This document shows positions 1,791 to 64,000 of a stretch of DNA of 64,000 bases, piece after piece. Under the pieces are notes generated by a model. That model made no database searches. It saw only the letters and a list, made by a program, of their open reading frames with translations, and was not told the origin of the DNA. The DNA is taken from positions 155,465 to 219,464 of IMG/VR virus record IMGVR_UViG_3300045051_000720, one strand, 5' to 3'. Each line of letters starts with the position of its first letter. Positions within the stretch are counted from its first letter, which is position 1. Position numbers and translations under genes: made by a program.

Positions 1791-2369
1791 ATGGACCTTC
1801 TCGCCTCTCTCATCAAGGGTCTGAAGACCCCTCCCGAAGACACATCCCTCTGGGGTCGTCTGCTCTCCCACTGGTGGGAGGTCAAGTGGTGGTGGGGGGA
1901 TCATATCTGGTCACACGCGCCGCGCTGGCTGAGGCATAGCTGGAGGTCATTCGCGCGCTGGTGGCACGAGCAGATCACTTGCCGCATCAACCCGCGCCAG
2001 CGATGGTTCACCAAGCAGATCCCGCGGACTTGGACCGAGAAGGAGGAGCTGATCGAGCTATGCCTCTACGCCGCCATCATCCACTTCGTTGAGGGCGAAG
2101 ACTGCTTCAACACCACCACCATTGACGAACCCCTCGCGAGCGAGCTGCGTGCCGTATACGACTGGGCCAAAACCGGCCGCGCCGCGGCGTTGGCGGCTCA
2201 ACAGGCCTCGTGGCATCCCGGTGCATGGGAGATGTGTGGAGTCACCATCGGCGAGGGCGTGGAGCGGGGGTCCACGGAGGAATATCGCCGTCTTGGCGAC
2301 GAGATCGAGGCACGGGACACCAGATGGCTTCAGTGGATCGTGGTCAACCGCGCGCACCTATGGACCTAG
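1791..2369 (+). CDS. hypothetical protein
   Basis: 192-aa Trp-rich ORF directly behind a leaderless promoter. Confidence 0.7.
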   Translation: MDLLASLIKGLKTPPEDTSLWGRLLSHWWEVKWWWGDHIWSHAPRWLRHSWRSFARWWHEQITCRINPRQRWFTKQIPRTWTEKEELIELCLYAAIIHFVEGEDCFNTTTIDEPLASELRAVYDWAKTGRAAALAAQQASWHPGAWEMCGVTIGEGVERGSTEEYRRLGDEIEARDTRWLQWIVVNRAHLWT

Positions 2370-2596
2370 ACGCCTTCACCACCACCGTCCTCTTCGTCGC
2401 CGCCATTGGATGGTCGGCGCTGGGCATCGCGATGTGCCATGAGCTGTACCATCTGGCCCCAACGTGGCGATGGAAGGCGTTTCTCATCGCAGCGGGCGGC
2501 CCAGCGGTCTGGGGCGTCGCGCTGTATCGAGGATTCAAGGCCCTCCGCCATAGGGTTCTTCACCACTTCGGCGTCGACCACTTCAGCTGCTCATGA
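2360..2596 (+). CDS. small membrane protein
   Basis: two hydrophobic segments; overlaps neighbours. Confidence 0.55.
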   Translation: MDLDAFTTTVLFVAAIGWSALGIAMCHELYHLAPTWRWKAFLIAAGGPAVWGVALYRGFKALRHRVLHHFGVDHFSCS

Positions 2597-2832
2597 CCCC
2601 TCAAGCCATCGCCACTCTCGCCGCCAGTCTGGGGTTCGACATCACACTGGACGGCGAGACCGTCCGGCTGGACGAGGATGTGTGGGTCTTGGACGATGAG
2701 TCGGGGGTCGAAGCGTGGGACAGGTATGTCGAGATCTGCCGGGTGTTGCACGCCCATGGGCTTGACATGCCCTTTGGTCTCGTTACCATAGAGCACGATC
2801 ACATCAGCGGTGTAATTACTGCGCCCTTATGA
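2593..2832 (+). CDS. hypothetical acidic protein
   Basis: ATGA-coupled 79-aa ORF. Confidence 0.6.
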   Translation: MTPQAIATLAASLGFDITLDGETVRLDEDVWVLDDESGVEAWDRYVEICRVLHAHGLDMPFGLVTIEHDHISGVITAPL

Positions 2833-2875: not shown

Positions 2876-4645
2876 TTGAAGACTCTCATCTACCGCTTCC
2901 GACTTGCTCCTAGCGTGCATCAATGTGCCATGATTGAGGCGAGTAACACACAACTGTGTCGGGTATGGAATGCTTTAGTAGGTGCCACCAAGCACGCCGA
3001 GCACGAATGCAAGCATGGACGCAAGACTTGCGTGGTCAAGCGATTAACTGATTTGCTGACCCAGAAGAAAGTCGTCGGGATGCGCGCGGCTGCCGTGAAA
3101 AAGCTGGCAGAATCCAAAGCAATATCATTAACGGATGCCAACAATCTTCTCACCCGCGAGCAGGTCGCCCGTGAGAGTCGCACGATTGTGCGCAAGAATG
3201 GAACCAAAGCGCGACGGTGTTCTATTCGTAAGCTGGCGTTGGCCTATGCCATTGCTACGGTAGGTCATCAGATCAACCGCTTCGGAGTGGAATCCGCCGC
3301 GTTTTGGGGAGTGATTGAAAAATTCAAAACCTCTACCGCCGACTATCCATTGGGCAAACGGGGTGCGCCCCGATTCAAACGAGTGGGTGATAACGTGTCC
3401 ATGCAGGCTCAGACCAAGAATCAACACGTCAAGGAGGGGGTCGTTGACCTATCGCGTTTAGTCGGTTCTAGTTGTTCCTGTGTCCACATGATTCAACACC
3501 GCCCGATTCCAGACGGCGCGATTGTCAAGCAGATGGCCGTGGTTAAGCAAAATGACCGGCTGTTTGTGGCCATCTTTGTTGATGTGCCAGATGCGGCGGC
3601 GCAAAAGAGTTTAATGGCAGCTAGTGGAGCGACGGCTGGTATTGATCCCGGCCGTAAGACGGCAGTGTCGCTCAGTTCTACAGACGGAACAATCCAACAG
3701 GTTGTCTCGCCCCCACTCTTGCGGGACAAACGGTTCATGCGTCGCACGGCGCGGTTGGCACGCAAGTTGGACAGGCAACGCCGCTTTGCCAATCCAGACC
3801 GCTACAATGAGGATGGCACCTTCAAGCGCGGAGCGCGCGGTGTGTGGGTGACAACCAAGGGAATGACTAAGACCCAAAAGCGTGCGAACGATTTGCGTCG
3901 CCGTCTTGTGGATGTACGCACAGAGCACTATCGTCTCAAAGCGCGCGAAGTGTTGAATCAGTTTGACCACGTTGGGATCGGTACATGGCGGCCCAAGGGT
4001 GCGCCGGGTGAAGGACAAGCCAAACGCGCACAGTTGCGCAAGGACGCAGATAACGCTTTGGGTCAATTCGCGGGTATCCTTCGGGACTATGCTGCGCGCA
4101 ATGTGACCCCCAAGAAGATCTACGATATCAATGAGGTCAACACCACCCGTCGTTGCATCAATTGTGGCGAGATGACGGGGCCGAGTGGGTTGTCCAACCT
4201 TGGGGTGCGCGAGTGGACGTGTTCCCACTGTGGTGCCCACCATCAGAGAGACTTTGCTAGTGCGCGAGCTATCGCTCTGCGCACTCAAATCGTGGCCGAT
4301 ACGCATTTGGTTAACGATGGTCCAACGACCAAAATTCAGCCTGTTCGTTATGCCGCAAAGCGTAACAAACGAAGTGGGTTGGTGGCGACACCAATCAATG
4401 TGCCCGTGGAACAGGAAGCGGAGGCCGCGAGGTCCCGTCTGAGTAAAAACGGTGCTCGTGCGAGTGCCCCAGTGGTAGACCATCCGGCCGATTGCACTCG
4501 CGTGCGAAAAGCCAATGCTGACGAAGGCTCTAGCAATATCCTCGCGTCAGAGCCAGCTACCAATGCCTGCAAAGGTAACCATCGCTCGCATAGTTGCGCC
4601 GTAGAACTTGAGTCCACGGTAGTTGTGGAGGAACACTCACTATGA
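2876..4645 (+). CDS. tnpB: TnpB-family RNA-guided endonuclease (IS200/IS605-type), solo, with rearranged RuvC-II
   Basis: N-terminal YRFRLAPS..LCRVWN, RuvC-I GIDPG, RuvC-II region DHVGIGTW, INEVNTTRRCINC..CSHC zinc finger, RuvC-III HQRDFASARAI; lower GC than flanks; no tnpA in window. Confidence 0.9.
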   Translation: MKTLIYRFRLAPSVHQCAMIEASNTQLCRVWNALVGATKHAEHECKHGRKTCVVKRLTDLLTQKKVVGMRAAAVKKLAESKAISLTDANNLLTREQVARESRTIVRKNGTKARRCSIRKLALAYAIATVGHQINRFGVESAAFWGVIEKFKTSTADYPLGKRGAPRFKRVGDNVSMQAQTKNQHVKEGVVDLSRLVGSSCSCVHMIQHRPIPDGAIVKQMAVVKQNDRLFVAIFVDVPDAAAQKSLMAASGATAGIDPGRKTAVSLSSTDGTIQQVVSPPLLRDKRFMRRTARLARKLDRQRRFANPDRYNEDGTFKRGARGVWVTTKGMTKTQKRANDLRRRLVDVRTEHYRLKAREVLNQFDHVGIGTWRPKGAPGEGQAKRAQLRKDADNALGQFAGILRDYAARNVTPKKIYDINEVNTTRRCINCGEMTGPSGLSNLGVREWTCSHCGAHHQRDFASARAIALRTQIVADTHLVNDGPTTKIQPVRYAAKRNKRSGLVATPINVPVEQEAEAARSRLSKNGARASAPVVDHPADCTRVRKANADEGSSNILASEPATNACKGNHRSHSCAVELESTVVVEEHSL

Positions 4646-16365: not shown

Positions 16366-16411
16366 TTTTCGACATCCAACGACAGGCCTTTTCGACATCC
16401 AACGACAGGCC
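16366..16411 (+). repeat. perfect 23-bp tandem duplication
   Basis: TTTTCGACATCCAACGACAGGCC x2. Confidence 0.9.
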
Positions 16412-16428
16412 TTTCCTACGACTTTCCC

Positions 16429-18134: not shown

Positions 18135-18680
18135 ATGAAGACCATCACCCTTCATCGCCTCAAGACCATCCTTGAGAACCTGACCCACGCCACGCCCGTG
18201 GGTGTCATCGCTTTGACCACCGCGGACTGCCGCGCCAAGGGGCCAACCGGCCCCAACCCATGGGGCAAGGATGGCGTCAAGAAACTGACTCGGCTTAACG
18301 CTATGATCGGCACGGACCACGAGCTGTCCATCCAGCGCCAACAGGCCCGCGAGGGTCAGGAAGCCGATTTCCTCGCTGCGCCGCGCTCATGGGGCGTTCG
18401 GATCGGACCGGGGTTGGTTGAGCATAGGGGGCAGTACTATTTGCCTCTCCAACTCAGTCCCGTCAACGCGGTGCGTCCATTATACTTGGTCCCCCGAGAA
18501 CGCGGGGCCAAGACCATCCTCACCGCCGTACCCAAGGAAATCGTTGCACCGTGGTTATCACCCGCGCGGGATGAGCGTGTCTATCAGGGGGTAGTCCGAC
18601 CGGTAGTTAGGCGCGATCTAAGGCTTGACAGTATCGTTAGCATCACTCTTGGCGGGGAGAAGTATCGCATTAGATCTTGA
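18135..18680 (+). CDS. conserved phage hypothetical protein upstream of the pentamer array
   Basis: leaderless ATG 18135; NPWG..VKKLTRLNAMIG..QRQQAREG..F..PRSWG..LVEHRGQYYL motifs. Confidence 0.75.
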   Translation: MKTITLHRLKTILENLTHATPVGVIALTTADCRAKGPTGPNPWGKDGVKKLTRLNAMIGTDHELSIQRQQAREGQEADFLAAPRSWGVRIGPGLVEHRGQYYLPLQLSPVNAVRPLYLVPRERGAKTILTAVPKEIVAPWLSPARDERVYQGVVRPVVRRDLRLDSIVSITLGGEKYRIRS

Positions 18681-18708
18681 CACTAGGCATCGTTTGGCAA
18701 CACTTAAA
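18677..18708 (+). promoter_or_regulatory. probable promoter of the pentamer array
   Basis: TTGACA at 18677, weak -10 (AACACT ~18699); predicted start near 18709 where the array begins. Confidence 0.5.
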
Positions 18709-19105
18709 GGCGGGGCTTGGCAGGGCTGGGCACGGCGGGGCACGGTTAGGCAAGTGTAAGGCAAGGAACGCGGTTCGGTATGGCAACGCGGGGCGACGCC
18801 GGGTTTGGCCGGGCGTGGCCGGGCGCGGCGAGGTTGGGTTAGGCATGGAACATGGTGTGGTGAGGCTGGGTATGGCGGGGCATGAGTAGGGCGAGGAACA
18901 TGGTAGGGCAAGGCTGGGCGCGGCTGAGCAGGGTCAGGTCCGGTACGGCTAGGCTCGGTTAGGCAAGGTCCGGGGCAGCGCGAGGTGTGGCACGGCTTGG
19001 CTGGGCAACGCACGGCCGGGTCCGGCGAGGCAAGGAACGAGGTGAGGTGGGGCAGGGCAGCGCGCGGCGTGGTCAGGCAGGGCTTGGCAGGGCAACGCAA
19101 GGTCC
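18709..19105 (+). ncRNA. GGY-NN pentamer array, candidate guide-RNA locus (VIPR-like)
   Basis: 64 exact GGYNN units plus 7 CGC/AGC variants in 5-nt register, six segments punctuated by GGC(AA/AT/GA)GGAAC; no credible ORF. Confidence 0.85.
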
Positions 19106-19138
19106 GAGGCGCGACGGTCTATCCGCGCACAATTTCTC

Positions 19139-19167
19139 TTGACAGTAGGCTCTAACATCACTACCTT
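19139..19167 (+). promoter_or_regulatory. promoter of RAMP gene
   Basis: TTGACA(19139)-17-TACCTT(19162). Confidence 0.65.
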
Positions 19168-19245: not shown

Positions 19246-19908
19246 ATGCAAAAGTATAATATCGCACTCGTTGGGGCAAATCCGCTCCTTCTTCATCACG
19301 ACAACATCTCGTGGGCTGGGCTCATGAACGAATGGAATACGGACCCCGCGAACAAAGCCAAGTCCGTCGCGGGCGACGACCGCACTCCCGCTCACCGTTG
19401 GATTGGTTGTCTATACCACGAGGGTGGTCGTCTCATCGTCCCCAGCGATAACCTCATGACTATGCTGCGTGAGGGTGGCGCGCGATGTCCGACTGGAAAG
19501 AAAGGCGCGACGTTCAAACGTCAGACCCAATCCGGGCTGGTTGTCGACCAGAGCGGATGGTCCTTGACTGTTGATGGCAAGGAAATCCCCTATGATCCTA
19601 TTGCCAAGCTTATCGACGAGCCCGACTTCACCAAGCACGAGAAGACGGTAGCGAAGATGGGTTTTGCGCTGTTTGTTAAACGCGCCCGTGTCAACCAGAC
19701 CAAACATGTCCGTGTGCGTCCTCGGTTCGACCGTTGGGAGGCGGCGGGCTCCATTACCGTGTTCGACGATACTATCACTGACCGCGTACTCGAAGACATC
19801 CTCAAGTTTGGAGGTCGTTACGCCGGTCTTGGCGATTGGCGTCCATCATCCCCGAAATCCCCCGGACCATTCGGAACCTTCACGGTGACCGTTTCCCCCG
19901 CATCATGA
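19246..19908 (+). CDS. stand-alone RAMP/Cas7-like protein (Vipr-like candidate effector)
   Basis: N-terminal strand YNIALVGANPLLLH, IVPSDNLMTMLREGG, RVRPRFDRWE strand and C-terminal Gly-rich loop GGRYAGLGDWRP..PGPFGTFTV. Confidence 0.8.
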   Translation: MQKYNIALVGANPLLLHHDNISWAGLMNEWNTDPANKAKSVAGDDRTPAHRWIGCLYHEGGRLIVPSDNLMTMLREGGARCPTGKKGATFKRQTQSGLVVDQSGWSLTVDGKEIPYDPIAKLIDEPDFTKHEKTVAKMGFALFVKRARVNQTKHVRVRPRFDRWEAAGSITVFDDTITDRVLEDILKFGGRYAGLGDWRPSSPKSPGPFGTFTVTVSPAS

Positions 19909-20378
19909 GCGCAACAACCAAACTCTTCGGCGGCGGCGTTCCTACTCAACCCGAGGTTGAAAGCCTGATCAAACGATTTGGTGTTCCTGCGGTAGGGACA
20001 TCGATTCTCTATGTCGATATTGCGGCTACCATTGGACATCCTGTTCGTAGCAATCGCTATCTCGCTGTAGTATCAAGGTGGCGTAAACGTCTGTTCCAGC
20101 AGCATAATCTATTGCTGGACCCTATTCATGGTGAATCCTATACGGTCTGTAACAACAGCCAACGTATTTCCCACAGCACTGGCAAGTACAAAAGCGGCCT
20201 TCGGCATATTCGACGTGCGTCCGAAGTAGCTGCTCGGACCGACACAGAAGGATTGCTTCCCGACGAGATGCGGGCTCGCGACCATATCGTCAAGACCGGT
20301 AATGCTTTGCAGCTAGCGGCGGCCACTGCCGCACGGCAACTCAAATATGTTGCGCCGGGGCTACCTCAGTCAACGTGA
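19905..20378 (+). CDS. RAMP-coupled accessory protein
   Basis: ATGA overlap with RAMP stop; 157 aa, basic, helical. Confidence 0.7.
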   Translation: MSATTKLFGGGVPTQPEVESLIKRFGVPAVGTSILYVDIAATIGHPVRSNRYLAVVSRWRKRLFQQHNLLLDPIHGESYTVCNNSQRISHSTGKYKSGLRHIRRASEVAARTDTEGLLPDEMRARDHIVKTGNALQLAAATAARQLKYVAPGLPQST

Positions 20379-20400
20379 AGATGTCACGTACCGTTTTACC

Positions 20401-20838
20401 ATGACCATCGTTGACACCTCCACCCGCCTCCCCACCACCCCCGGACCCTACGCGGTTCTGGTCAAACCCGCACAGGGCTACCACCGCGCCATTGAGACCG
20501 GCGTGAGCTGGGATGGGTCATGGAAAGGGACCGATGATCCCGTCGTCGCGTGGGTTGACACCGCCGCGCGCGTTGCCGTTGTGCCTTCTCCGACTCAGGC
20601 GGTTGAACCCTCATCCTATTCCCTCACCCTCGTGGGCTTCGATCCTACCAGCAAGATCGGCGTGATCAAGCTCGTGCGCGAGCTGACGGGGCTCGGGTTG
20701 GCTGAATCCAAAGCGACGGTCGAGGCCCTTGCGATCAAACCCCTCATGATCAAGGAGAATGCTTCTCGCGCCGAGGTAACCGCACTGGACACCCGTCTGC
20801 GCGCGGCGGGTGGGGTGACCAAACTGGAGGCCGTATGA
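20401..20838 (+). CDS. ribosomal protein L7/L12 C-terminal-domain fusion protein
   Basis: YSLTLVGFDPTSKIGVIKLVRELTGLGLAESKATVE..P..IKENASRAE..L..AGG matches bL12 CTD; unrelated N-terminal domain. Confidence 0.8.
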   Translation: MTIVDTSTRLPTTPGPYAVLVKPAQGYHRAIETGVSWDGSWKGTDDPVVAWVDTAARVAVVPSPTQAVEPSSYSLTLVGFDPTSKIGVIKLVRELTGLGLAESKATVEALAIKPLMIKENASRAEVTALDTRLRAAGGVTKLEAV

Positions 20839-58948: not shown

Positions 58949-59815
58949 ATGACAGCACACATCAATGTGGACCTCAAGGTCCACGTCAACGGCAACGCAG
59001 TTGCTACCTATACCCACGAGGGTCGCACCTACGTGGAGGCTCGCGAGGGGTCTGAATACGCCCTCTTCATCAAGAACAACAACCCCTTCCGCGTGAAGGT
59101 GGTTCTTAGCGTCGACGGAATCAACGTGGTTGGAGGCGAGGCCGCCACAGGCGAGCGCGAGGAGACGGGCTATATCCTCGATGCCTATCAATCGACCACC
59201 ATCAAGGGCTATCGCGTCGATGACAACACCGTCGCCGCTTTTCGCTTCACCAAAGCGGACGGCGGTTATGCCAAGGCCGAGAAGGGCCTGACGGGCACTA
59301 CAGGCGTGATTGGCTGCCGGGTGTGGCGAGAAAAACCCGCGCCCGCACCCGTCATCAAGGAGATCCATCACCATCATGGTTCGTATGGCCAGCTGTGGCC
59401 CTATCGTCCGCGCTACTATGGCGATCCCATCTGGTACTGGAACGACTCATCTTTTTGCACGCTGACGTGCGGTACCAGCAATGTGGCAGGAGGTGCAGTG
59501 GCTTACAACGCCTGTGCGCAAGCGTCTGTCGACAATGCCGTGCGCATGATGAACTGCTCCATGCAGTCCTCGACGCAGTTGGTCCCAGAGACTAACCCCT
59601 TTGACGCCGGGTCTACGTGGGGCGGGAAAGTCGAGTCTAAGGTTACTGCGGTCGGCTTCGAGGCTGAGACCTTGCTGGACACCCTCACCATCTACTACGC
59701 TTTCAAGGCGGGGTTGATGGCGTTGGGCGTAGACACGAGCCGCGCCCAGAAGGTGGCCTTCCCACAAGCGTTTAGCGGGGCCTACTGCAAGCCACCCGCG
59801 AGTTGGGTAGGCTAA
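58949..59815 (+). CDS. conserved hypothetical protein (288 aa)
   Basis: EGSEYALFIKNN..VVLSVDGINV..GYIL..IKGYR..FRF..GVIG motifs; AGGAG RBS. Confidence 0.75.
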   Translation: MTAHINVDLKVHVNGNAVATYTHEGRTYVEAREGSEYALFIKNNNPFRVKVVLSVDGINVVGGEAATGEREETGYILDAYQSTTIKGYRVDDNTVAAFRFTKADGGYAKAEKGLTGTTGVIGCRVWREKPAPAPVIKEIHHHHGSYGQLWPYRPRYYGDPIWYWNDSSFCTLTCGTSNVAGGAVAYNACAQASVDNAVRMMNCSMQSSTQLVPETNPFDAGSTWGGKVESKVTAVGFEAETLLDTLTIYYAFKAGLMALGVDTSRAQKVAFPQAFSGAYCKPPASWVG

Positions 59816-59928
59816 GCGCCGTACACCTGCCGCGCGCCCGTTTCAGGGCCGAGCCCGCGCCGCGCGCGGCGGTGTATCTCTCATCGGTGGGTCACCACCT
59901 GTTCTTTTCTGCGCCAACCCCTCATCCA

Positions 59929-60705
59929 TTGAGCAACAAACGCCGTCTGGCCAAAGCCAAGTCTCATCCTGCCACCACAATTCAGCTTCCCGTTGATCGC
60001 AGTCCAAAGGTCCATCAACGAGACAAGCTGAGTCAAACGCTAGCCATCCGACAACGCGACGATCTAACCGAACGACAGAAGGTCATCCTAGAGACCGCAC
60101 TACATCGCGACACCCGTGCGCTTTTTATTGACGGTGTGTGGGGCAGCGGTAAGACCTATCTCGCTGTACTCGCGTCCCTTATGTTGCTTAACACCGGGCG
60201 TGTTGACCAAATCGTTTACATTCGCAACCCGATTGAGGCTACCACGACAGGCAAGCTGGGTTATCTCAAAGGCGATCAGGGGGAGAAGATGGCTCCTTAC
60301 TGTGCGCCTCTCTATGACAAGCTAGACGAGATGCTCTGCAAGGGAGACATCGACTCTTTGGTCAAGGATGATCGTGTAGAAACACTACCCCTCGGCTTCA
60401 TCCGTGGACGCAGCTGGAACTGCAAAGCCATTATCGTAGACGAGGCCTCGTCTATGACGTGGGACGATCTGTTACTCATCCTCTCGCGATGCGGTGAGTT
60501 CACTCGCGTCTTCCTAATCGGAGACAGTATTAACCAGAACGACATCGGGTCTAAAGCGGGCTTTCGCCGCATGTTTGCTACTTTCGACGACCCCGACAGC
60601 AAGGAGCATGGGGTGTTTGCATTCGAACTGCGCGAACCGAGCGACATCGTGAGGAGTCGGTTTCTACGCTACGTGATGACCAAGACGGGGGTCATAAAAG
60701 GATAG
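59929..60705 (+). CDS. phoH: PhoH-family ATPase
   Basis: Walker A GVWGSGKT, PLGFIRGRSW..IIVDEAS..LSR.GE..GD..Q.D motifs. Confidence 0.9.
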   Translation: MSNKRRLAKAKSHPATTIQLPVDRSPKVHQRDKLSQTLAIRQRDDLTERQKVILETALHRDTRALFIDGVWGSGKTYLAVLASLMLLNTGRVDQIVYIRNPIEATTTGKLGYLKGDQGEKMAPYCAPLYDKLDEMLCKGDIDSLVKDDRVETLPLGFIRGRSWNCKAIIVDEASSMTWDDLLLILSRCGEFTRVFLIGDSINQNDIGSKAGFRRMFATFDDPDSKEHGVFAFELREPSDIVRSRFLRYVMTKTGVIKG

Positions 60706-60729
60706 CCCATCAAGTGTATAGTCAACGTC

Positions 60730-61437
60730 ATGTCTTACGGACTCATCTATCTCGCCACTAATCAAGATAACGGGCTCAAATATATCGGACAGACTGTGGC
60801 TACCCTCATCACGAGACGCCAAAAACACATTGATTCGGTAAACGCGGGTAGCACGACCTATTTTCACAACGCGATGCGTAGTCATGGGATAAACGCATTT
60901 GCGTTTACTGTGATCGATACCGCCGACTCCCAAGATGAACTAGACCGCAAAGAGCGGTATTGGATACAGTATTATGAGACTCGCGAGCGCACTAAGGGAT
61001 ATAACACCAAAGACGGCGGTAAACTAGGTGCCGTCCTCAACGAAGATATTATCCGCAAAATCAGTCAAGCCAATACAGGTAAAAAACGTTCCCCGGAAGC
61101 ACGAGCGAAAATGTCGGCCCGCAAAAAGGGTATCCCTAATCCCGCGCATTCGGAACGGATGAAACGTCTGTTTCAGGAGAGACCTAGCTGGTGGATAGGC
61201 AAGACGCATACCGAGGACACAAAGAGGCTACTGGCCGATAAACACCGAGGCAAACACCATTCGCCACATACGCAATACCCGTCAGTAACTATACAATGCG
61301 TGGAGACGGGTGTAATTTTCCCGTCCATCTCTGCCGCGGCACGCCATGTAGGTGTCAATCCGTCAGGCTTCGACCGGCTTAAAAAACATCCGAATCAGCG
61401 TGTCAAAGGGTTTCATTGGGTGCGTCTGACAGCTTAA
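60730..61437 (+). CDS. GIY-YIG homing endonuclease with NUMOD3-like repeats
   Basis: GLIYLATN..KYIGQT..R..H..E.YWI..GYN; TGKKRSPEARAKMS and GKTHTEDTKRLL repeats; low GC. Confidence 0.9.
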   Translation: MSYGLIYLATNQDNGLKYIGQTVATLITRRQKHIDSVNAGSTTYFHNAMRSHGINAFAFTVIDTADSQDELDRKERYWIQYYETRERTKGYNTKDGGKLGAVLNEDIIRKISQANTGKKRSPEARAKMSARKKGIPNPAHSERMKRLFQERPSWWIGKTHTEDTKRLLADKHRGKHHSPHTQYPSVTIQCVETGVIFPSISAAARHVGVNPSGFDRLKKHPNQRVKGFHWVRLTA

Positions 61438-61441
61438 TTAA

Positions 61442-61570
61442 CCCTCCTACCGCGAGAAGGGTATCCACTACGTATCCTTCACGGAGGATGACATCCTGCG
61501 GTCCGGCATCACCCGCGAACTGGTCAAGGCCCTAGCTGCTTACCGGGCCTCAATCAGGCCAGCTCACTAA
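61442..61570 (+). pseudogene. orphan phoH 3' fragment
   Basis: PSYREKGIHYVSFTEDDILRSGITRELVKALAAY..* with no start codon; parallels the last ~35 aa of the upstream PhoH. Confidence 0.75.
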
Positions 61571-63219
61571 TACTGGACTCCAACCACCCGCCAGTTAGAC
61601 GCATCACTGCGTACGGTCACGCCCTGCCCCTGCCCGCTGACCACCCAGCTGGACAGTCCATTGATGGTCTGAGCACCCACCGGGACCACCGCCACGCGAT
61701 TGGCTGAACTGTCAGTTTTGATCACGGTGAACTGCTGGCCGAGATTGAACTCGGCGGTCGGTAGATAACCCGTGCGCGGCCCCGAGGTGGCGTCCATCAG
61801 CAGCGTGTCCCACCGGAAGTCGAGAGTGGCGTTGGCGGTGGACGAATAGACGGGGACACTGATCGCCTTGTTGAAATCCTGCGTGCCCGGCCCGAGGTTA
61901 CCGAAGGCCTGCGCGCCGCTGATGAATCCCGGCGAAGGGAGGGCCATGAACCCCGCTGAATCAGCGCGGGCAGTGTTGTTGCCCTCGAACAGGAGGCTGC
62001 GGAACCCCACGGTAGCATTGGCGGTATAGAACGAAATACCCGCCACGTCCGCGCGCCCGCTGAACATGTTGCCACAGAGGTTCAGCCCGTTGCAGATGTA
62101 GTCGGCGTCCAAGAACACGAAATCGAAGCCGCTGACCGTGGAGAACGAGTTCCCGCAGATGGACAGATCGTTCCACGCCTTCGCATTGATGCCGTGCGCG
62201 CCGTTGGTGATGCCGATGATCATGGCGATGTTGTTGCCCATGATCTTGATGTTGTCGCTGTACTGGAGGTCCACATGCGTGCCGGTGAAGCCGGTGACGT
62301 GGTTGCCCGTGACCGTGACGAAGGTGGAGCCCGAGTTGAGGCTGATGGCGTTGCCAGTGCTCAGCACACCAGCCGCGGACCGCCCATCAATCGTGTTGCC
62401 CGTCACCGTGACCTCCGAACAGGCGGCCACCTCGATGCCGTACGTGCTCGGCGCGTTGATGACGTTGCCAGACACCGTCATCTTTTTCGATCCAGACAGC
62501 GAGATCCCCATGGTCACGCCGCGAATGGTGTTGCCGGTCACCGCGCAGGAGTCCACGCTCGTTTGCAGCTCAATCCCCTGCACGATGGTACCCTCAAGGA
62601 TGTTGTTCGCGATGGTGTGGCCGCCATAGGGGGCACTCGCTGTCCCATGGAAGGTGATGCCGCTGCCGCCGCTGATGGCCGCACCGAGGTAGTTGCCCAC
62701 GATGCGGCAGTTCACCGGCTGGGTGCCGCCGCTGGTGTTGCCGAAAATCGCGGTGCCGTAGGCGGTGAAGCGGTTATCGCGAATCAGGATGTCCGAGCAC
62801 GCGCCGAGCACGCGCACGCCGCAGTCGGCGGTGTTCTGGAACGTGCAGTCGGCCACCGTGATCTTGGAGCAGGTGATGAGGTCAATCAGCCCGTTGTTGA
62901 CCGCCGCCGCCGCGCTGACCCACGCGCCGTCCAGCGTGAAGCCGTAGAACTGGACGTTCGTGCGGCTGGTGCAGGTGAACATCACGTATTGGGCCTCGCT
63001 GGACCCAATCAGTTTGGCCCCATAGCCCATGAACCGCATGTTGTCGTTGGTGATGGTCAGGGCCGCGCTCAGTTTGTATGTGCGACCGGACTGGAATACG
63101 ACCGACCCGCCCGGCCCAGCCGCCGTGATCGCACGCGTGATGGCCGCGTAATCGTCGATGACGCCATCGCCCACCGCACCATAATCGGCTACGTTGACTG
63201 TATAGGTTGTGTTTGCCAT
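61567..63219 (-). CDS. tailspike/depolymerase-like right-handed beta-helix protein (pectate lyase 3-like)
   Basis: VNVADYGAVGDGVIDDYAAITRAI N-terminus followed by many parallel beta-helix repeats (VTGNTI, ISGNVI); ATG at 63219. Confidence 0.85.
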   Translation of the reverse strand: MANTTYTVNVADYGAVGDGVIDDYAAITRAITAAGPGGSVVFQSGRTYKLSAALTITNDNMRFMGYGAKLIGSSEAQYVMFTCTSRTNVQFYGFTLDGAWVSAAAAVNNGLIDLITCSKITVADCTFQNTADCGVRVLGACSDILIRDNRFTAYGTAIFGNTSGGTQPVNCRIVGNYLGAAISGGSGITFHGTASAPYGGHTIANNILEGTIVQGIELQTSVDSCAVTGNTIRGVTMGISLSGSKKMTVSGNVINAPSTYGIEVAACSEVTVTGNTIDGRSAAGVLSTGNAISLNSGSTFVTVTGNHVTGFTGTHVDLQYSDNIKIMGNNIAMIIGITNGAHGINAKAWNDLSICGNSFSTVSGFDFVFLDADYICNGLNLCGNMFSGRADVAGISFYTANATVGFRSLLFEGNNTARADSAGFMALPSPGFISGAQAFGNLGPGTQDFNKAISVPVYSSTANATLDFRWDTLLMDATSGPRTGYLPTAEFNLGQQFTVIKTDSSANRVAVVPVGAQTINGLSSWVVSGQGQGVTVRSDASNWRVVGVQY

Positions 63220-63233
63220 GGGTGTGGGGGTGC

Positions 63234-63530
63234 TTACATCATGCGGAGCCACGAGCCGCCGTCGCTCTGAAGGACGACACAAGCGTATGGAGTGACCGTG
63301 CAGTTGGTACCGTAGTCCACAGAACCGGTGAGCAGGAGAGACGCGCCGGTATTGATGCTCTTGATCGTGAGTTGAGCGCCGGAGATGACGCTCGGCGCGG
63401 CCAACGTGCCGGTCCACGAGAGTGCTCCTTGGCCCGACCAGAGGTAGCGCGAACCGTAGCCGCTGAGCGTAAAATTGCCGGTCACGTTGGACCAAGGGAG
63501 GAGGGTGAATTGTGTAGGGAAATAGGCCAT
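63234..63530 (-). CDS. small tail-associated protein
   Basis: 98-aa beta-rich ORF ending LQSDGGSW. Confidence 0.6.
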   Translation of the reverse strand: MAYFPTQFTLLPWSNVTGNFTLSGYGSRYLWSGQGALSWTGTLAAPSVISGAQLTIKSINTGASLLLTGSVDYGTNCTVTPYACVVLQSDGGSWLRMM

Positions 63531-63533
63531 GGG

Positions 63534-64000
63534 TTATAGAATCGCCCACACCGTGCCGTCATATTGCGCAATAACGGCGTCGCCAGTATTGAGGGGCATG
63601 GTAGCGGCGGTAGTGTTGGTAAAGAGGTTGGCACCATTACCTGAGACCGTGATCAATCCCGCCCCCTTGTTCTTTATCAGGTACCGCTGGCCCGTGCCGG
63701 GGCCGGCGGGCAGCGTCACGGTGAAGGCCGAGCCGGAGTTGCAGACCACGGTGTCATACGAGGTGTCAAGGGTCGTGCCGGTGGTGATGACTGCGATCTT
63801 GGACAGCCGACCGCCGGCCGTGGAGAGATTACCAGTCCCGGAGACGGTGAGGTTGCCGGCGAGGGTGGCGTTGCCTGTGGTGCCTAACGAGAAAATGGAT
63901 GAGCCGCCGTCAACCGTCATATACAGCGTGGTCGCGCCGCCGAAAATGTCCCAATCATGCGCCCCCGAACGGGTCAATCGGAGTTGACCGTCTGCGCTGG
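63534..64000 (-). CDS. tail fibre/virion protein, 5'-truncated by window edge
   Basis: frame open to the window end; Gly/Thr-rich fibre repeats then YDTVVCN..FTVTLP..YLIKN..YDGTVW domain. Confidence 0.7.
   Translation of the reverse strand, partial: SADGQLRLTRSGAHDWDIFGGATTLYMTVDGGSSIFSLGTTGNATLAGNLTVSGTGNLSTAGGRLSKIAVITTGTTLDTSYDTVVCNSGSAFTVTLPAGPGTGQRYLIKNKGAGLITVSGNGANLFTNTTAATMPLNTGDAVIAQYDGTVWAIL

What the first reader, a model, noticed from the sequence alone, without database searches (positions are those of the whole stretch)
18709..19105. GGY-NN pentamer array: candidate non-contiguous guide RNA locus
Seen: ~400 bp in strict 5-nt register, with 64 exact GGY+NN units and 7 CGC/AGC variants. 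The triplet is constant while the dinucleotide is highly variable, unlike a microsatellite or a CRISPR repeat-spacer array. It begins where an upstream TTGACA promoter would initiate and ends before the promoter of a RAMP gene on the same strand. Known: RAMP/Cas7 proteins polymerise along guide RNA with fixed periodicity. From memory (to verify), phage VIPR systems pair such a RAMP with GGY/NN RNAs whose NN bases read a gapped DNA target. Inference: a programmable RNA-guided system in which information is carried only by the NN positions.
Basis: partly seen in the sequence, partly recalled or inferred. Interest (0 to 1): 0.97.

Follow-up and report, generated by a model that had tools for sequence, protein, structure and literature searches.

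The report
Phage VIPR guide-RNA array locus
This is a real array of about 71 five-base GGY+NN units that sits next to a small RAMP protein gene in a 219-kb phage, a new example of the recently published VIPR RNA-guided DNA-silencing systems, so it is a clean rediscovery rather than a new kind of system.

Summary
Positions 18709-19105 contain exactly 64 GGYNN and 7 CGC/AGC pentamers, and this is the only such array in the 64 kb. It has 49 GGY-5-GGY pairs against 0.8 expected.

It is not in one strict register. Five 7-nt junctions (4x GGAACNN, 1x GGTCCGG) and two 6-nt irregular units shift the phase. A sixth junction, GGTCCGA, closes the array. Together the junctions cut it into six guide blocks of 8-15 units.

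The downstream ORF (19246-19908) is a Vipr homologue:
- The family profile matches the solved SUSP1 Vipr protein at E=1.5e-12.
- The GGY-contacting residues H17, R158 and D197-W198-R199 are invariant.
- The AF2 model matches Cas7/Csm3 RAMPs.

A conserved 157-aa accessory gene (19905-20378, winged-helix-like) follows. Of 99 related loci, 98 carry same-strand GGYNN arrays beside the gene. Twenty-five of them use the same 7-nt junction.

No DNA target of the six guides was found. Expression and maturation remain untested. The compact, tail-less junction architecture is the only part that may go beyond the published work.

The parts
18675..18704 (+). Promoter-like element for the array: -35 TTGACA at 18677-18682, a 16-nt spacer, and a weak -10 AACACT at 18699-18704. 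The predicted start is about 18710, which is the first repeat unit.
   Evidence: Sequence. TCTTGACA occurs 9 times in the window against 1.3 expected. The 14-nt extended -35 is shared 13/14 with the vipr promoter. The sigma-70 scan did not call it. Function is inferred.
18709..19107 (+). vrRNA array: 71 GGYNN-type units in six guide blocks. The blocks are separated by five internal junctions and closed by a sixth, all 7 nt long.
   Evidence: This is the only such array in the window.
18709..18771 (+). Guide block 1: 9 canonical units, a 6-nt irregular unit (18754-18759), GGCAA, and the junction GGAACGC.
   Evidence: Parse.
18772..18853 (+). Guide block 2: 15 units (two of them CGC variants) plus the junction GGAACAT.
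18854..18901 (+). Guide block 3: 6 units, a 6-nt irregular unit (18884-18889), GGCGA, and the junction GGAACAT.
   Evidence: The relative L101 has the same GGCAT+GAG... irregular end.
18902..18973 (+). Guide block 4: 13 units (one AGC variant) plus the junction GGTCCGG.
   Evidence: L072 uses the analogous GGTCTGG junction.
18974..19040 (+). Guide block 5: 12 units (two CGC variants) plus the junction GGAACGA.
19041..19107 (+). Guide block 6: 12 units (two CGC variants) plus the junction GGTCCGA.
19108..19138 (+). Array end: one orphan unit GGCGC, a short GC hairpin (GCGCG 19109-19113 paired with CGCGC 19124-19128), then a U-rich tract. This is a possible weak terminator or 3' cap.
   Evidence: L101 has the same GGCGCG...CGCGCAAT..ATTT ending. 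The fold is not better than shuffles (z = 0.06), so this is weak evidence.
19137..19167 (+). Promoter-like element for vipr-vap: -35 TTGACA at 19139-19144, a 17-nt spacer, and -10 TACCTT at 19162-19167.
   Evidence: Function is inferred.
19246..19908 (+). vipr: a 220-aa minimal RAMP protein and homologue of SUSP1 Vipr.
   Evidence: phmmer against PDB chain 36pp_D 'SUSP1 Vipr protein' gives E=2.8e-5; the profile of 30 homologues gives E=1.5e-12. H17, R158, D197, W198 and R199 are invariant and correspond to the SUSP1 contacts H17, R138, D177, W178 and R179. The AF2 model has pLDDT 91. Foldseek top hits are Cas7/Csm3 and viral RAMP-like proteins. It also matches phrog_4652.
19905..20378 (+). vap-like accessory gene: 157 aa, with its ATG overlapping the vipr stop (ATGA). 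The model is a winged-helix-like domain plus a long helical hairpin.
   Evidence: Conserved beside vipr in 70 of 80 IMG/VR loci. The AF2 model has pLDDT 91 with topology a-b-a-a-b-b plus two long helices. Foldseek gives only weak hits, mostly winged-helix regulators (best E 0.02). There is no Pfam or PHROG hit and no homologue in GenBank phages.

Best explanation
The locus is a VIPR (Viral Interference Programmable Repeat) system carried by a 219-kb uncultured phage. It consists of a promoter-like element, a compact array of six guide blocks on the + strand (18709-19107), and then a vipr-vap operon.

The mechanism below is inferred by homology with the characterised SUSP1 and P. fulva systems:
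1. The array is transcribed as one precursor, because 7-nt junctions leave no room for internal promoters.
2. Vipr protomers polymerise one per pentamer. They bury each GGY through H17, R158 and the G-loop D197-W198-R199, and expose the NN dinucleotides.
3. Each filament reads double-stranded DNA that carries the same dinucleotides separated by one skipped base (xNN).
4. It forms a gapped R-loop triplex and silences transcription of a competing phage, prophage or satellite. The winged-helix-like Vap assists.

Specific to this clade, the roughly 40-nt pseudoknot tail of SUSP1 vrRNAs is replaced by a conserved junction, GGC-R-A GGAAC R-N. This junction inserts two extra bases and puts a purine where the pyrimidine pocket expects Y. 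I infer that this breaks the filament register and so marks the end of one guide and the start of the next, either as a cleavage site or as a filament stop.

Shown here: the repeat anatomy and its statistics, the protein homology and conserved contact residues, the co-occurrence and strand rule, and the conserved junction. Inferred: transcription, maturation, DNA binding, the 1-nt skip rule in this clade, and the biological target.
For: Array statistics.

Vipr homology: E=2.8e-5 pairwise and 1.5e-12 by profile to PDB 36pp_D 'SUSP1 Vipr protein', colinear over both halves. The published GGY-contact residues are invariant in 30 homologues.

Fold: the AF2 model (pLDDT 91) matches Cas7/Csm3 RAMPs (prob 1.0, E 3e-5, TM 0.45-0.5). 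It also matches viral proteins, including one named 'Cas system-associated RAMP superfamily protein' (E 2.6e-9).

Co-occurrence: all 79 other IMG/VR loci, 18 of 19 genome loci, and the closest long-contig relative L101 carry GGYNN arrays flanking the gene. There are 353 guide runs on the gene's strand and 0 on the other.

Accessory gene: vap is conserved in 70 of 80 loci.

Junction:
- Spacing between adjacent runs in 98 loci has a sharp spike at exactly 7 nt (116 cases).
- 89 unique GGAAC junctions give the logo GGC-R-A GGAAC R-N, while neighbouring NN positions are near uniform.
- Array architecture tracks the Vipr tree (9 changes against 20.8 in shuffles, 0 of 500 as low).
- The published GGY>GGA substitution abolishes silencing, which fits GGA acting as a stop.

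Skip rule and self-targeting: no self-target in the window, as published for other VIPRs. Guides from relatives hit a Sak4-like gene of another VIPR phage with the skips on wobble positions.

Phage context.
Against: - No target was found for any of the six guides. Exact 1-nt-skip core patterns gave nothing in IMG/VR or in JGI metagenome contigs. The single hit for guide 1 (L081) is what chance predicts, is not wobble-phased and does not extend.
- Seven units are non-canonical and two are 6 nt long.
- Both -10 boxes are weak.
- There is no 3' tail or pseudoknot, and the array RNA is not more structured than shuffles.
- The protein is only about 23% identical to the SUSP1-group Vipr. Vap has no detectable sequence relative among cultured phages.
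- Nothing here shows expression or binding.
Confidence: 0.9

Rival explanations
1. It is a VIPR locus, but the array is not cut into six vrRNAs. One long transcript carries several filaments, or longer composite guides, and the 7-nt junctions are only phase slips tolerated by the filament.
For: No ribozyme, hairpin or Rfam element lies between the blocks. Blocks 1 and 3 contain further 6-nt slips that are not at conserved junctions. The published text says staggered arrays were not among the architectures confirmed by sRNA-seq.
Against: The junction is strongly conserved in sequence and in exact length across 25 loci. Block lengths of 8-15 units match the published 9-16 repeats per vrRNA. A purine at the Y position is reported to abolish function.
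Confidence: 0.2
2. It is a decaying, non-functional VIPR remnant in the phage genome.
For: Seven non-canonical and two irregular units. No target was found. The -10 boxes are weak.
Against: vipr and vap are intact, translationally coupled ORFs. Every residue that is invariant in 30 homologues is present in the window protein, which is the first row of that alignment. 64 of 71 units are canonical. The published systems also show 'frequently observed internal degeneracy'. The closest relative has the same layout.
Confidence: 0.06
3. The repeat is the coding sequence of a proline/alanine-rich low-complexity protein on the minus strand (ORF 18618-19100, 160 aa).
For: An uninterrupted 160-aa ORF spans the array. 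A gene caller annotated the equivalent region of L101 as a 117-aa gene.
Against: The periodicity is 5 nt, not 3 nt. 44% of arrays with shuffled NN have an equally long open stretch, so the ORF is a by-product of composition. The conserved feature across 98 loci is the pentamer scaffold on the vipr strand, with free NN, which no reading frame would preserve.
Confidence: 0.01
4. It is a structural DNA element, either a slippage-prone microsatellite or a G-quadruplex-forming G-rich tract, unrelated to guide RNAs.
For: The + strand is 49% G, and GG runs spaced by 3 nt could in principle form two-tetrad quadruplexes (my inference).
Against: Microsatellites have uniform units, whereas here NN carries 3.79 of 4 bits. 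The strict association with vipr, on its strand, in 98 of 99 loci from many phyla is not explained by DNA structure.
Confidence: 0.02

Closest known systems
Type II VIPR of Escherichia phage SUSP1 and the Pseudomonas fulva prophage (bioRxiv 10.64898/2026.04.26.720920 and .720927)
   Same: A single small RAMP protein (Vipr) with the same GGY-contact residues; vrRNAs built of GGY/NN pentamers on the gene's strand; a two-gene vipr-vap core; phage-borne; 8-15 units per guide block against the published 9-16.
   Different: Only about 23% protein identity to the Felixounavirus (SUSP1-group) homologues. There is no ~40-nt conserved tail or pseudoknot, and guides abut through a 7-nt junction. All six guides lie in one upstream array behind one promoter. 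Vap has no sequence match in cultured phages. The host phage is 219 kb.
[quoted passage not shown]
   Same: [quoted passage not shown] In the paper's YNNGG framing, the C of GGAAC can be read both as the end of one block and as the Y of the next unit, which would be a 1-nt overlap.
   Different: The figure is not available to me, so identity with the GGAACNN architecture is unverified. The paper states that the ribozyme and single-vrRNA types, not the staggered type, were confirmed by sRNA-seq. The text I read mentions neither the junction logo (GGC-R-A GGAAC R-N) nor its exact 7-nt length.
Class 1 CRISPR backbone RAMPs (Cas7 of type VII, Csm3 of type III-A)
   Same: Best solved-structure matches of the model: RRM core, G-loop, thumb, and polymerisation along a guide with periodic base flipping.
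   Different: 5-nt rather than 6-nt periodicity. No repeat-spacer array. None of the roughly 25 window ORFs I scanned matched a Cas5, Cas6 or adaptation-gene family. The guide information is non-contiguous.
TIGR-Tas tandem interspaced guide RNA arrays
   Same: Tandem short-period arrays that carry guide information next to their effector gene.
   Different: 18-nt period and an unrelated effector fold. Not a candidate family here.

Membership tests
VIPR | A Vipr protein homologous to characterised Vipr | tested here: met
   The match to PDB 36pp_D 'SUSP1 Vipr protein' is E=2.8e-5 with the single sequence and 1.5e-12 with a 30-sequence profile, colinear over both halves. There are 122 GenBank phage records with full-length matches at 23-29% identity, mostly Felixounavirus.
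VIPR | Minimal RAMP fold: RRM core, glycine-rich loop and thumb | tested here: met
   AF2 model pLDDT 91, pTM 0.86. The top 40 or so PDB hits are Cas7/Csm3 RAMPs. The G-loop motif G-D-W-R-P at 196-200 is invariant or nearly so.
VIPR | Residues that bind G1, G2 and Y3 of GGY (SUSP1 H17, R138, D177, W178, R179) | tested here: met
   They align to H17, R158, D197, W198 and R199, all invariant in alignment A1.
VIPR | Tandem GGY/NN (YNNGG) repeats, at least 4 units, beside vipr on the same strand | tested here: met
   71 units at 18709-19105, 140 nt upstream of vipr, on the + strand.
VIPR | GGY conserved while NN is hypervariable | tested here: met
   Entropy is 0.52/0/0.88 bits at the scaffold positions against 1.92/1.95 bits at NN. 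The same holds across 89 junction contexts in relatives.
VIPR | A conserved accessory gene (vap) next to vipr | tested here: met
   The 157-aa ORF 19905-20378 is coupled to vipr, and homologues are adjacent in 70 of 80 loci. The winged-helix-like model rests on weak fold evidence. Which of vap1-6 it is could not be decided.
VIPR | Viral or proviral genome context without an associated CRISPR array | tested here: met
   IMG/VR contig of 219,464 bp. The window carries lysozyme, tail spike, PhoH and a homing endonuclease. There is no CRISPR-type repeat or Rfam hit.
VIPR | vrRNAs are expressed and co-purify with Vipr | not testable with these tools
   This needs sRNA-seq and pull-down.
VIPR | Guides match natural DNA targets under the 1-nt skip rule (at least 80% of NN), typically in competing mobile elements | tested here: inconclusive
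   There are no hits above the control skip rules in the window or in the 79 other IMG/VR loci. Exact core scans of IMG/VR and JGI metagenome contigs were empty, except for one chance-level hit. In relatives there is one wobble-phased hit on a Sak4-like gene.
VIPR type II (SUSP1 clade) | Each repeat tract is followed by a conserved ~40-nt 3' tail with a pseudoknot | tested here: not met
   Blocks are separated by exactly 7 nt, with no structure beyond shuffles. I therefore do not file the locus under type II. Its type among I-VII could not be assigned because the classification data are not held.
CRISPR-Cas class 1 | A repeat-spacer array with a contiguous spacer of about 30 nt or more, plus Cas5/Cas6/large-subunit and adaptation genes | tested here: not met
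   No such repeats. The neighbours are vap and non-conserved small ORFs.

The most novel reading that the evidence does not exclude
The compact arrays of this Vipr clade may be a mechanistically distinct, tail-less class of vrRNA. A conserved 10-11-nt junction (GGC-R-A GGAAC R-N) adds two bases and places a purine in the pyrimidine pocket. It would replace the pseudoknot tail as the element that ends one Vipr filament and starts the next. One promoter would then deliver six or more guides at about 65 nt each, with a maturation or capping mechanism that has not been characterised experimentally.
Probability: 0.3. Interest if true: 0.55.

Novelty: new member of a known kind. Interest (0 to 1): 0.3.

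Why it matters
- It places a complete VIPR system (array, vipr, vap) in a 219-kb environmental phage. The Vipr clade it belongs to has no cultured representative above 30% identity, yet its profile finds 2,547 protein clusters (50% identity level) at E<=1e-3, 258 of them at E<=1e-30, in public data.
- The comparative data give a precise, testable definition of a compact multi-guide architecture. This is practically interesting for multiplexed programmable repression, and it bears on how Vipr filaments are bounded.
- These arrays are routinely mis-annotated as ORFs.
- It does not change the picture of what VIPR is.

Tried and rejected
- **Near-identical DNA in GenBank phages:** none.
- **Pfam on vipr and vap:** no hit.
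- **Rfam and tRNA scans of the window:** nothing, so there are no hammerhead ribozymes between guides.
- **Consensus promoter/terminator scan:** called neither TTGACA site nor a terminator at the array end.
- **RNA folding:** neither the array nor its end folds better than shuffles.
- **Local target search under the 1-nt skip rule:** checked against skip rules 0, 2 and 3 in the window and in the 79 other IMG/VR loci. No excess.
- **IMG/VR scans with exact xNN cores:** guide 2 full length, guide 2 with its two CGC units masked, guide 4 units 2-11, guide 5 units 1-10 and guide 6 units 1-10 all returned 0.
- **JGI metagenome scans:** guide 2 units 4-14 and guide 4 units 3-12 returned 0.
- **Guide 1 (18 specified bases):** one hit, L081:11901-11926. 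I rejected it as a target because about one chance hit is expected at that specificity (my estimate of database size). It also straddles a stop codon out of wobble phase, does not extend into the next units, and no other guide hits that contig.
- **All-against-all test of 171 relatives' guides on 640 kb:** only a marginal excess for the 1-nt skip rule.
- **Assignment to one of the seven published types:** not possible, because no supplementary data are held.
- **Minus-strand ORF reading:** rejected by simulation.

Full report
**What is in the sequence**

Positions 18709-19105 on the + strand are built from five-base units whose first three bases are GGY and whose last two bases vary.

- Scaffold positions carry 0.52, 0 and 0.88 bits of entropy. 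The two N positions carry 1.92 and 1.95 bits.
- 15 of 16 dinucleotides are used.
- The region holds 49 GGY-5-GGY pairs. The rest of the window predicts 0.76 for that length, and 2000 shuffles of the region give a mean of 2.7 and a maximum of 11.
- No other run of four or more units exists on either strand of the 64 kb.

The array is real and far beyond chance.

**Correction to the observation**

The register is not strict. It changes seven times. Parsing shows why:
- The array is a chain of six blocks of 8-15 units (6-15 canonical units, plus in blocks 1 and 3 an irregular unit and one more).
- Five internal 7-nt junctions join the blocks: GGAAC+NN four times and GGTCC+GG once. A sixth, GGTCC+GA, closes the array at 19107.
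- Blocks 1 and 3 each contain one 6-nt irregular unit.
- One orphan unit follows the last junction, then a short GC hairpin and a U-rich stretch (19108-19138).

The same ending is seen in the closest relative L101, but it does not fold better than shuffles.

**The neighbouring genes**

The 220-aa ORF at 19246-19908 has no Pfam hit. Several lines identify it as a Vipr homologue:
- It matches the solved 'SUSP1 Vipr protein' (PDB 36pp_D) at E=2.8e-5, and at E=1.5e-12 with a profile of 30 homologues. The match is colinear over both halves.
- The cryo-EM paper lists the residues that hold G1, G2 and Y3 of each GGY in SUSP1 as H17, R138, D177, W178 and R179. They align to H17, R158, D197, W198 and R199 here, and all are invariant in the alignment.
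- An AlphaFold2 model (pLDDT 91) finds Cas7 and Csm3 backbone RAMPs as its best solved matches. In the viral structure library it finds uncharacterised phage proteins, one of them named a RAMP-superfamily protein.

The next ORF (19905-20378, 157 aa) starts on an ATGA overlap with the vipr stop. Homologues lie beside vipr in 70 of 80 related viral loci. Its model has a winged-helix topology followed by two long helices. The fold matches are weak but are mostly winged-helix DNA-binding regulators. This fits the published description of vap genes as predicted DNA-binding proteins.

The ORFs further up- and downstream, including one with a ribosomal L7/L12 C-terminal-like domain, are not conserved with vipr.

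**Comparative test**

The opposite is seen:
- All 79 other IMG/VR loci that encode a homologue (48-67% identity) have GGYNN arrays directly flanking the gene.
- 18 of 19 loci from bacterial and archaeal genome assemblies of many phyla do too. The exception is a 46-residue fragment match.
- So does the closest long-contig relative, a 35-kb integrase-bearing phage.
- I called 353 guide runs on the gene's strand and none on the opposite strand.

**The junction**

In relatives, the distance between adjacent runs has a sharp spike at exactly 7 nt (116 cases), on top of a broad 20-70-nt distribution that corresponds to tailed vrRNAs.
- At 89 unique GGAAC junctions the consensus is GGC-R-A GGAAC R-N, followed by GGY. 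Ordinary NN positions nearby are close to uniform.
- Other loci use GGACTAA, GGATCAC, GGACCGA or GGTCTGG.
- In the paper's YNNGG framing, all of these amount to a two-base insertion between GG and Y.
- Compact and tailed architectures cluster on the Vipr tree (9 changes against 20.8 in shuffles, 0 of 500 as low). The window sits among compact-array loci.

A 7-nt junction cannot hold a promoter, so the array must be made as one precursor (inference). The published GGY>GGA mutant abolishes silencing, and the Y pocket sterically excludes purines. I therefore infer that the junction stops or interrupts the Vipr filament and marks guide boundaries. Whether the RNA is also cut there is unknown.

**Transcription signals**

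TTGACA boxes lie at 18677 and 19139, inside a shared 14-nt motif. TCTTGACA is seven-fold enriched in the window. The consensus scan did not call either site, so this remains an inference.

**Targets**

Under the published rule, each NN pairs and one target base is skipped. I found the following:
- There is no self-target in the window and no target in the related loci.
- Exact core patterns of guides 2, 4, 5 and 6 returned nothing from IMG/VR or from JGI metagenome contigs.
- Guide 1 gave one hit, which I judge to be chance.
- The collection scans accept only exact patterns, so targets with one or two mismatches inside the cores would be missed.

There is one side result. A guide shared by L021, L022 and L023, and a related guide of L068, match the antisense strand of a Sak4-like gene in another VIPR phage (L027). 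The matches are 17/18 and 17/20 NN bases, with the skipped bases on codon position 3. This is suggestive support for the same rule in this clade.

**Comparison with what is known**

VIPR was described in 2026:
- discovery, code and types (10.64898/2026.04.26.720920);
- structures (10.64898/2026.04.26.720927);
- satellite competition (10.64898/2026.10.15.759431);
- an independent recovery of 99 VIPR-like clusters by a language model (10.64898/2026.10.21.760802).

The locus meets every sequence-level criterion of the family. It fails only the type II feature of a ~40-nt tail. It probably corresponds to, or is close to, the 'staggered arrays' mentioned there, which I could not check because figures and supplementary data are not held.

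In cultured phages the protein has only distant relatives (23-29% identity; Felixounavirus, LESphi2, LittleE, Trine), all annotated as hypothetical. The profile finds 2,547 cluster representatives in public data.

**Rivals**

- A minus-strand Pro/Ala-rich ORF spans the array, but composition explains it. 44% of NN-shuffled arrays are equally open, and the periodicity is 5 nt, not 3 nt.
- A microsatellite or a purely structural G-rich element does not explain the high NN entropy or the strand-specific linkage to vipr.
- A decayed remnant is unlikely, given intact coupled genes and 64 of 71 canonical units.
- The live alternative is that the junctions are filament breaks on an uncut multi-guide RNA rather than processing sites.

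**Verdict**

This is a genuine, well-formed VIPR locus and a new member of a known kind. The conserved 7-nt junction architecture and the unknown targets are the parts worth experimental follow-up.

Noticed in passing
window 2876-4645 (+): A 589-aa ORF with a Cas12f1-like TNB domain (PF07282, E 9e-10) that also matches PHROG transposase phrog_506 (E 1e-34). It is a TnpB/IS200-IS605-type RNA-guided nuclease gene in the same phage window.
   Followed up: no
window 20347-20838 (+): A 163-aa ORF whose C-terminal 67 residues match the ribosomal protein L7/L12 C-terminal domain (PF00542, E 5e-14). It overlaps the 3' end of vap by 32 nt but is absent next to vipr in the 79 other IMG/VR loci.
   Followed up: partly
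window, e.g. 2839, 5961, 7499, 11051, 21998 (+) and 58850 (-): A recurrent promoter-like motif: CTTGACA, 5 nt, GTTCAAC, then a -10-like box 17 nt after TTGACA. TCTTGACA occurs 9 times against 1.3 expected. This is probably the phage's own promoter family.
   Followed up: partly
window 16366-16414: A perfect 23-nt tandem repeat, 2.1 copies.
   Followed up: no
window 59803-61437 (+): A PhoH-like ATPase gene immediately followed by a GIY-YIG/NUMOD3 homing endonuclease gene. A beta-helix tail-spike gene lies on the opposite strand at 61567-63549.
   Followed up: no
L101 3629-3982; window 18618-19100 (-): Automatic gene calling turns vrRNA arrays into protein genes. In L101 the array is annotated as a 117-aa product. 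In the window a 160-aa ORF is listed over the array.
   Followed up: yes
L027 2280-2305 (-), inside ORF 1800-2717 (+): Guides from four other VIPR phages (L021, L022 and L023 at about 3752-3808; L068 at 3885-3934) match this site in a Sak4-like AAA_24 gene. The matches are 17/18 and 17/20 NN bases under the 1-nt skip rule, with the skipped bases on codon position 3. This is a likely natural inter-phage target.
   Followed up: partly
window 18787, 18797, 18979, 19009, 19061, 19096: All six CGC variant units follow a purine-purine dinucleotide. The pair GGCAA+CGCAN recurs at 18782, 19004 and 19091, and sits at guide 3' ends in the relative L101. This is unexplained.
   Followed up: no
L081 11901-11926 (-): The only exact 1-nt-skip match of any window guide (guide 1, 18 specified bases) in IMG/VR. 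It straddles the stop codon of a 314-aa ORF with no family hit. I judge it a chance match.
   Followed up: yes
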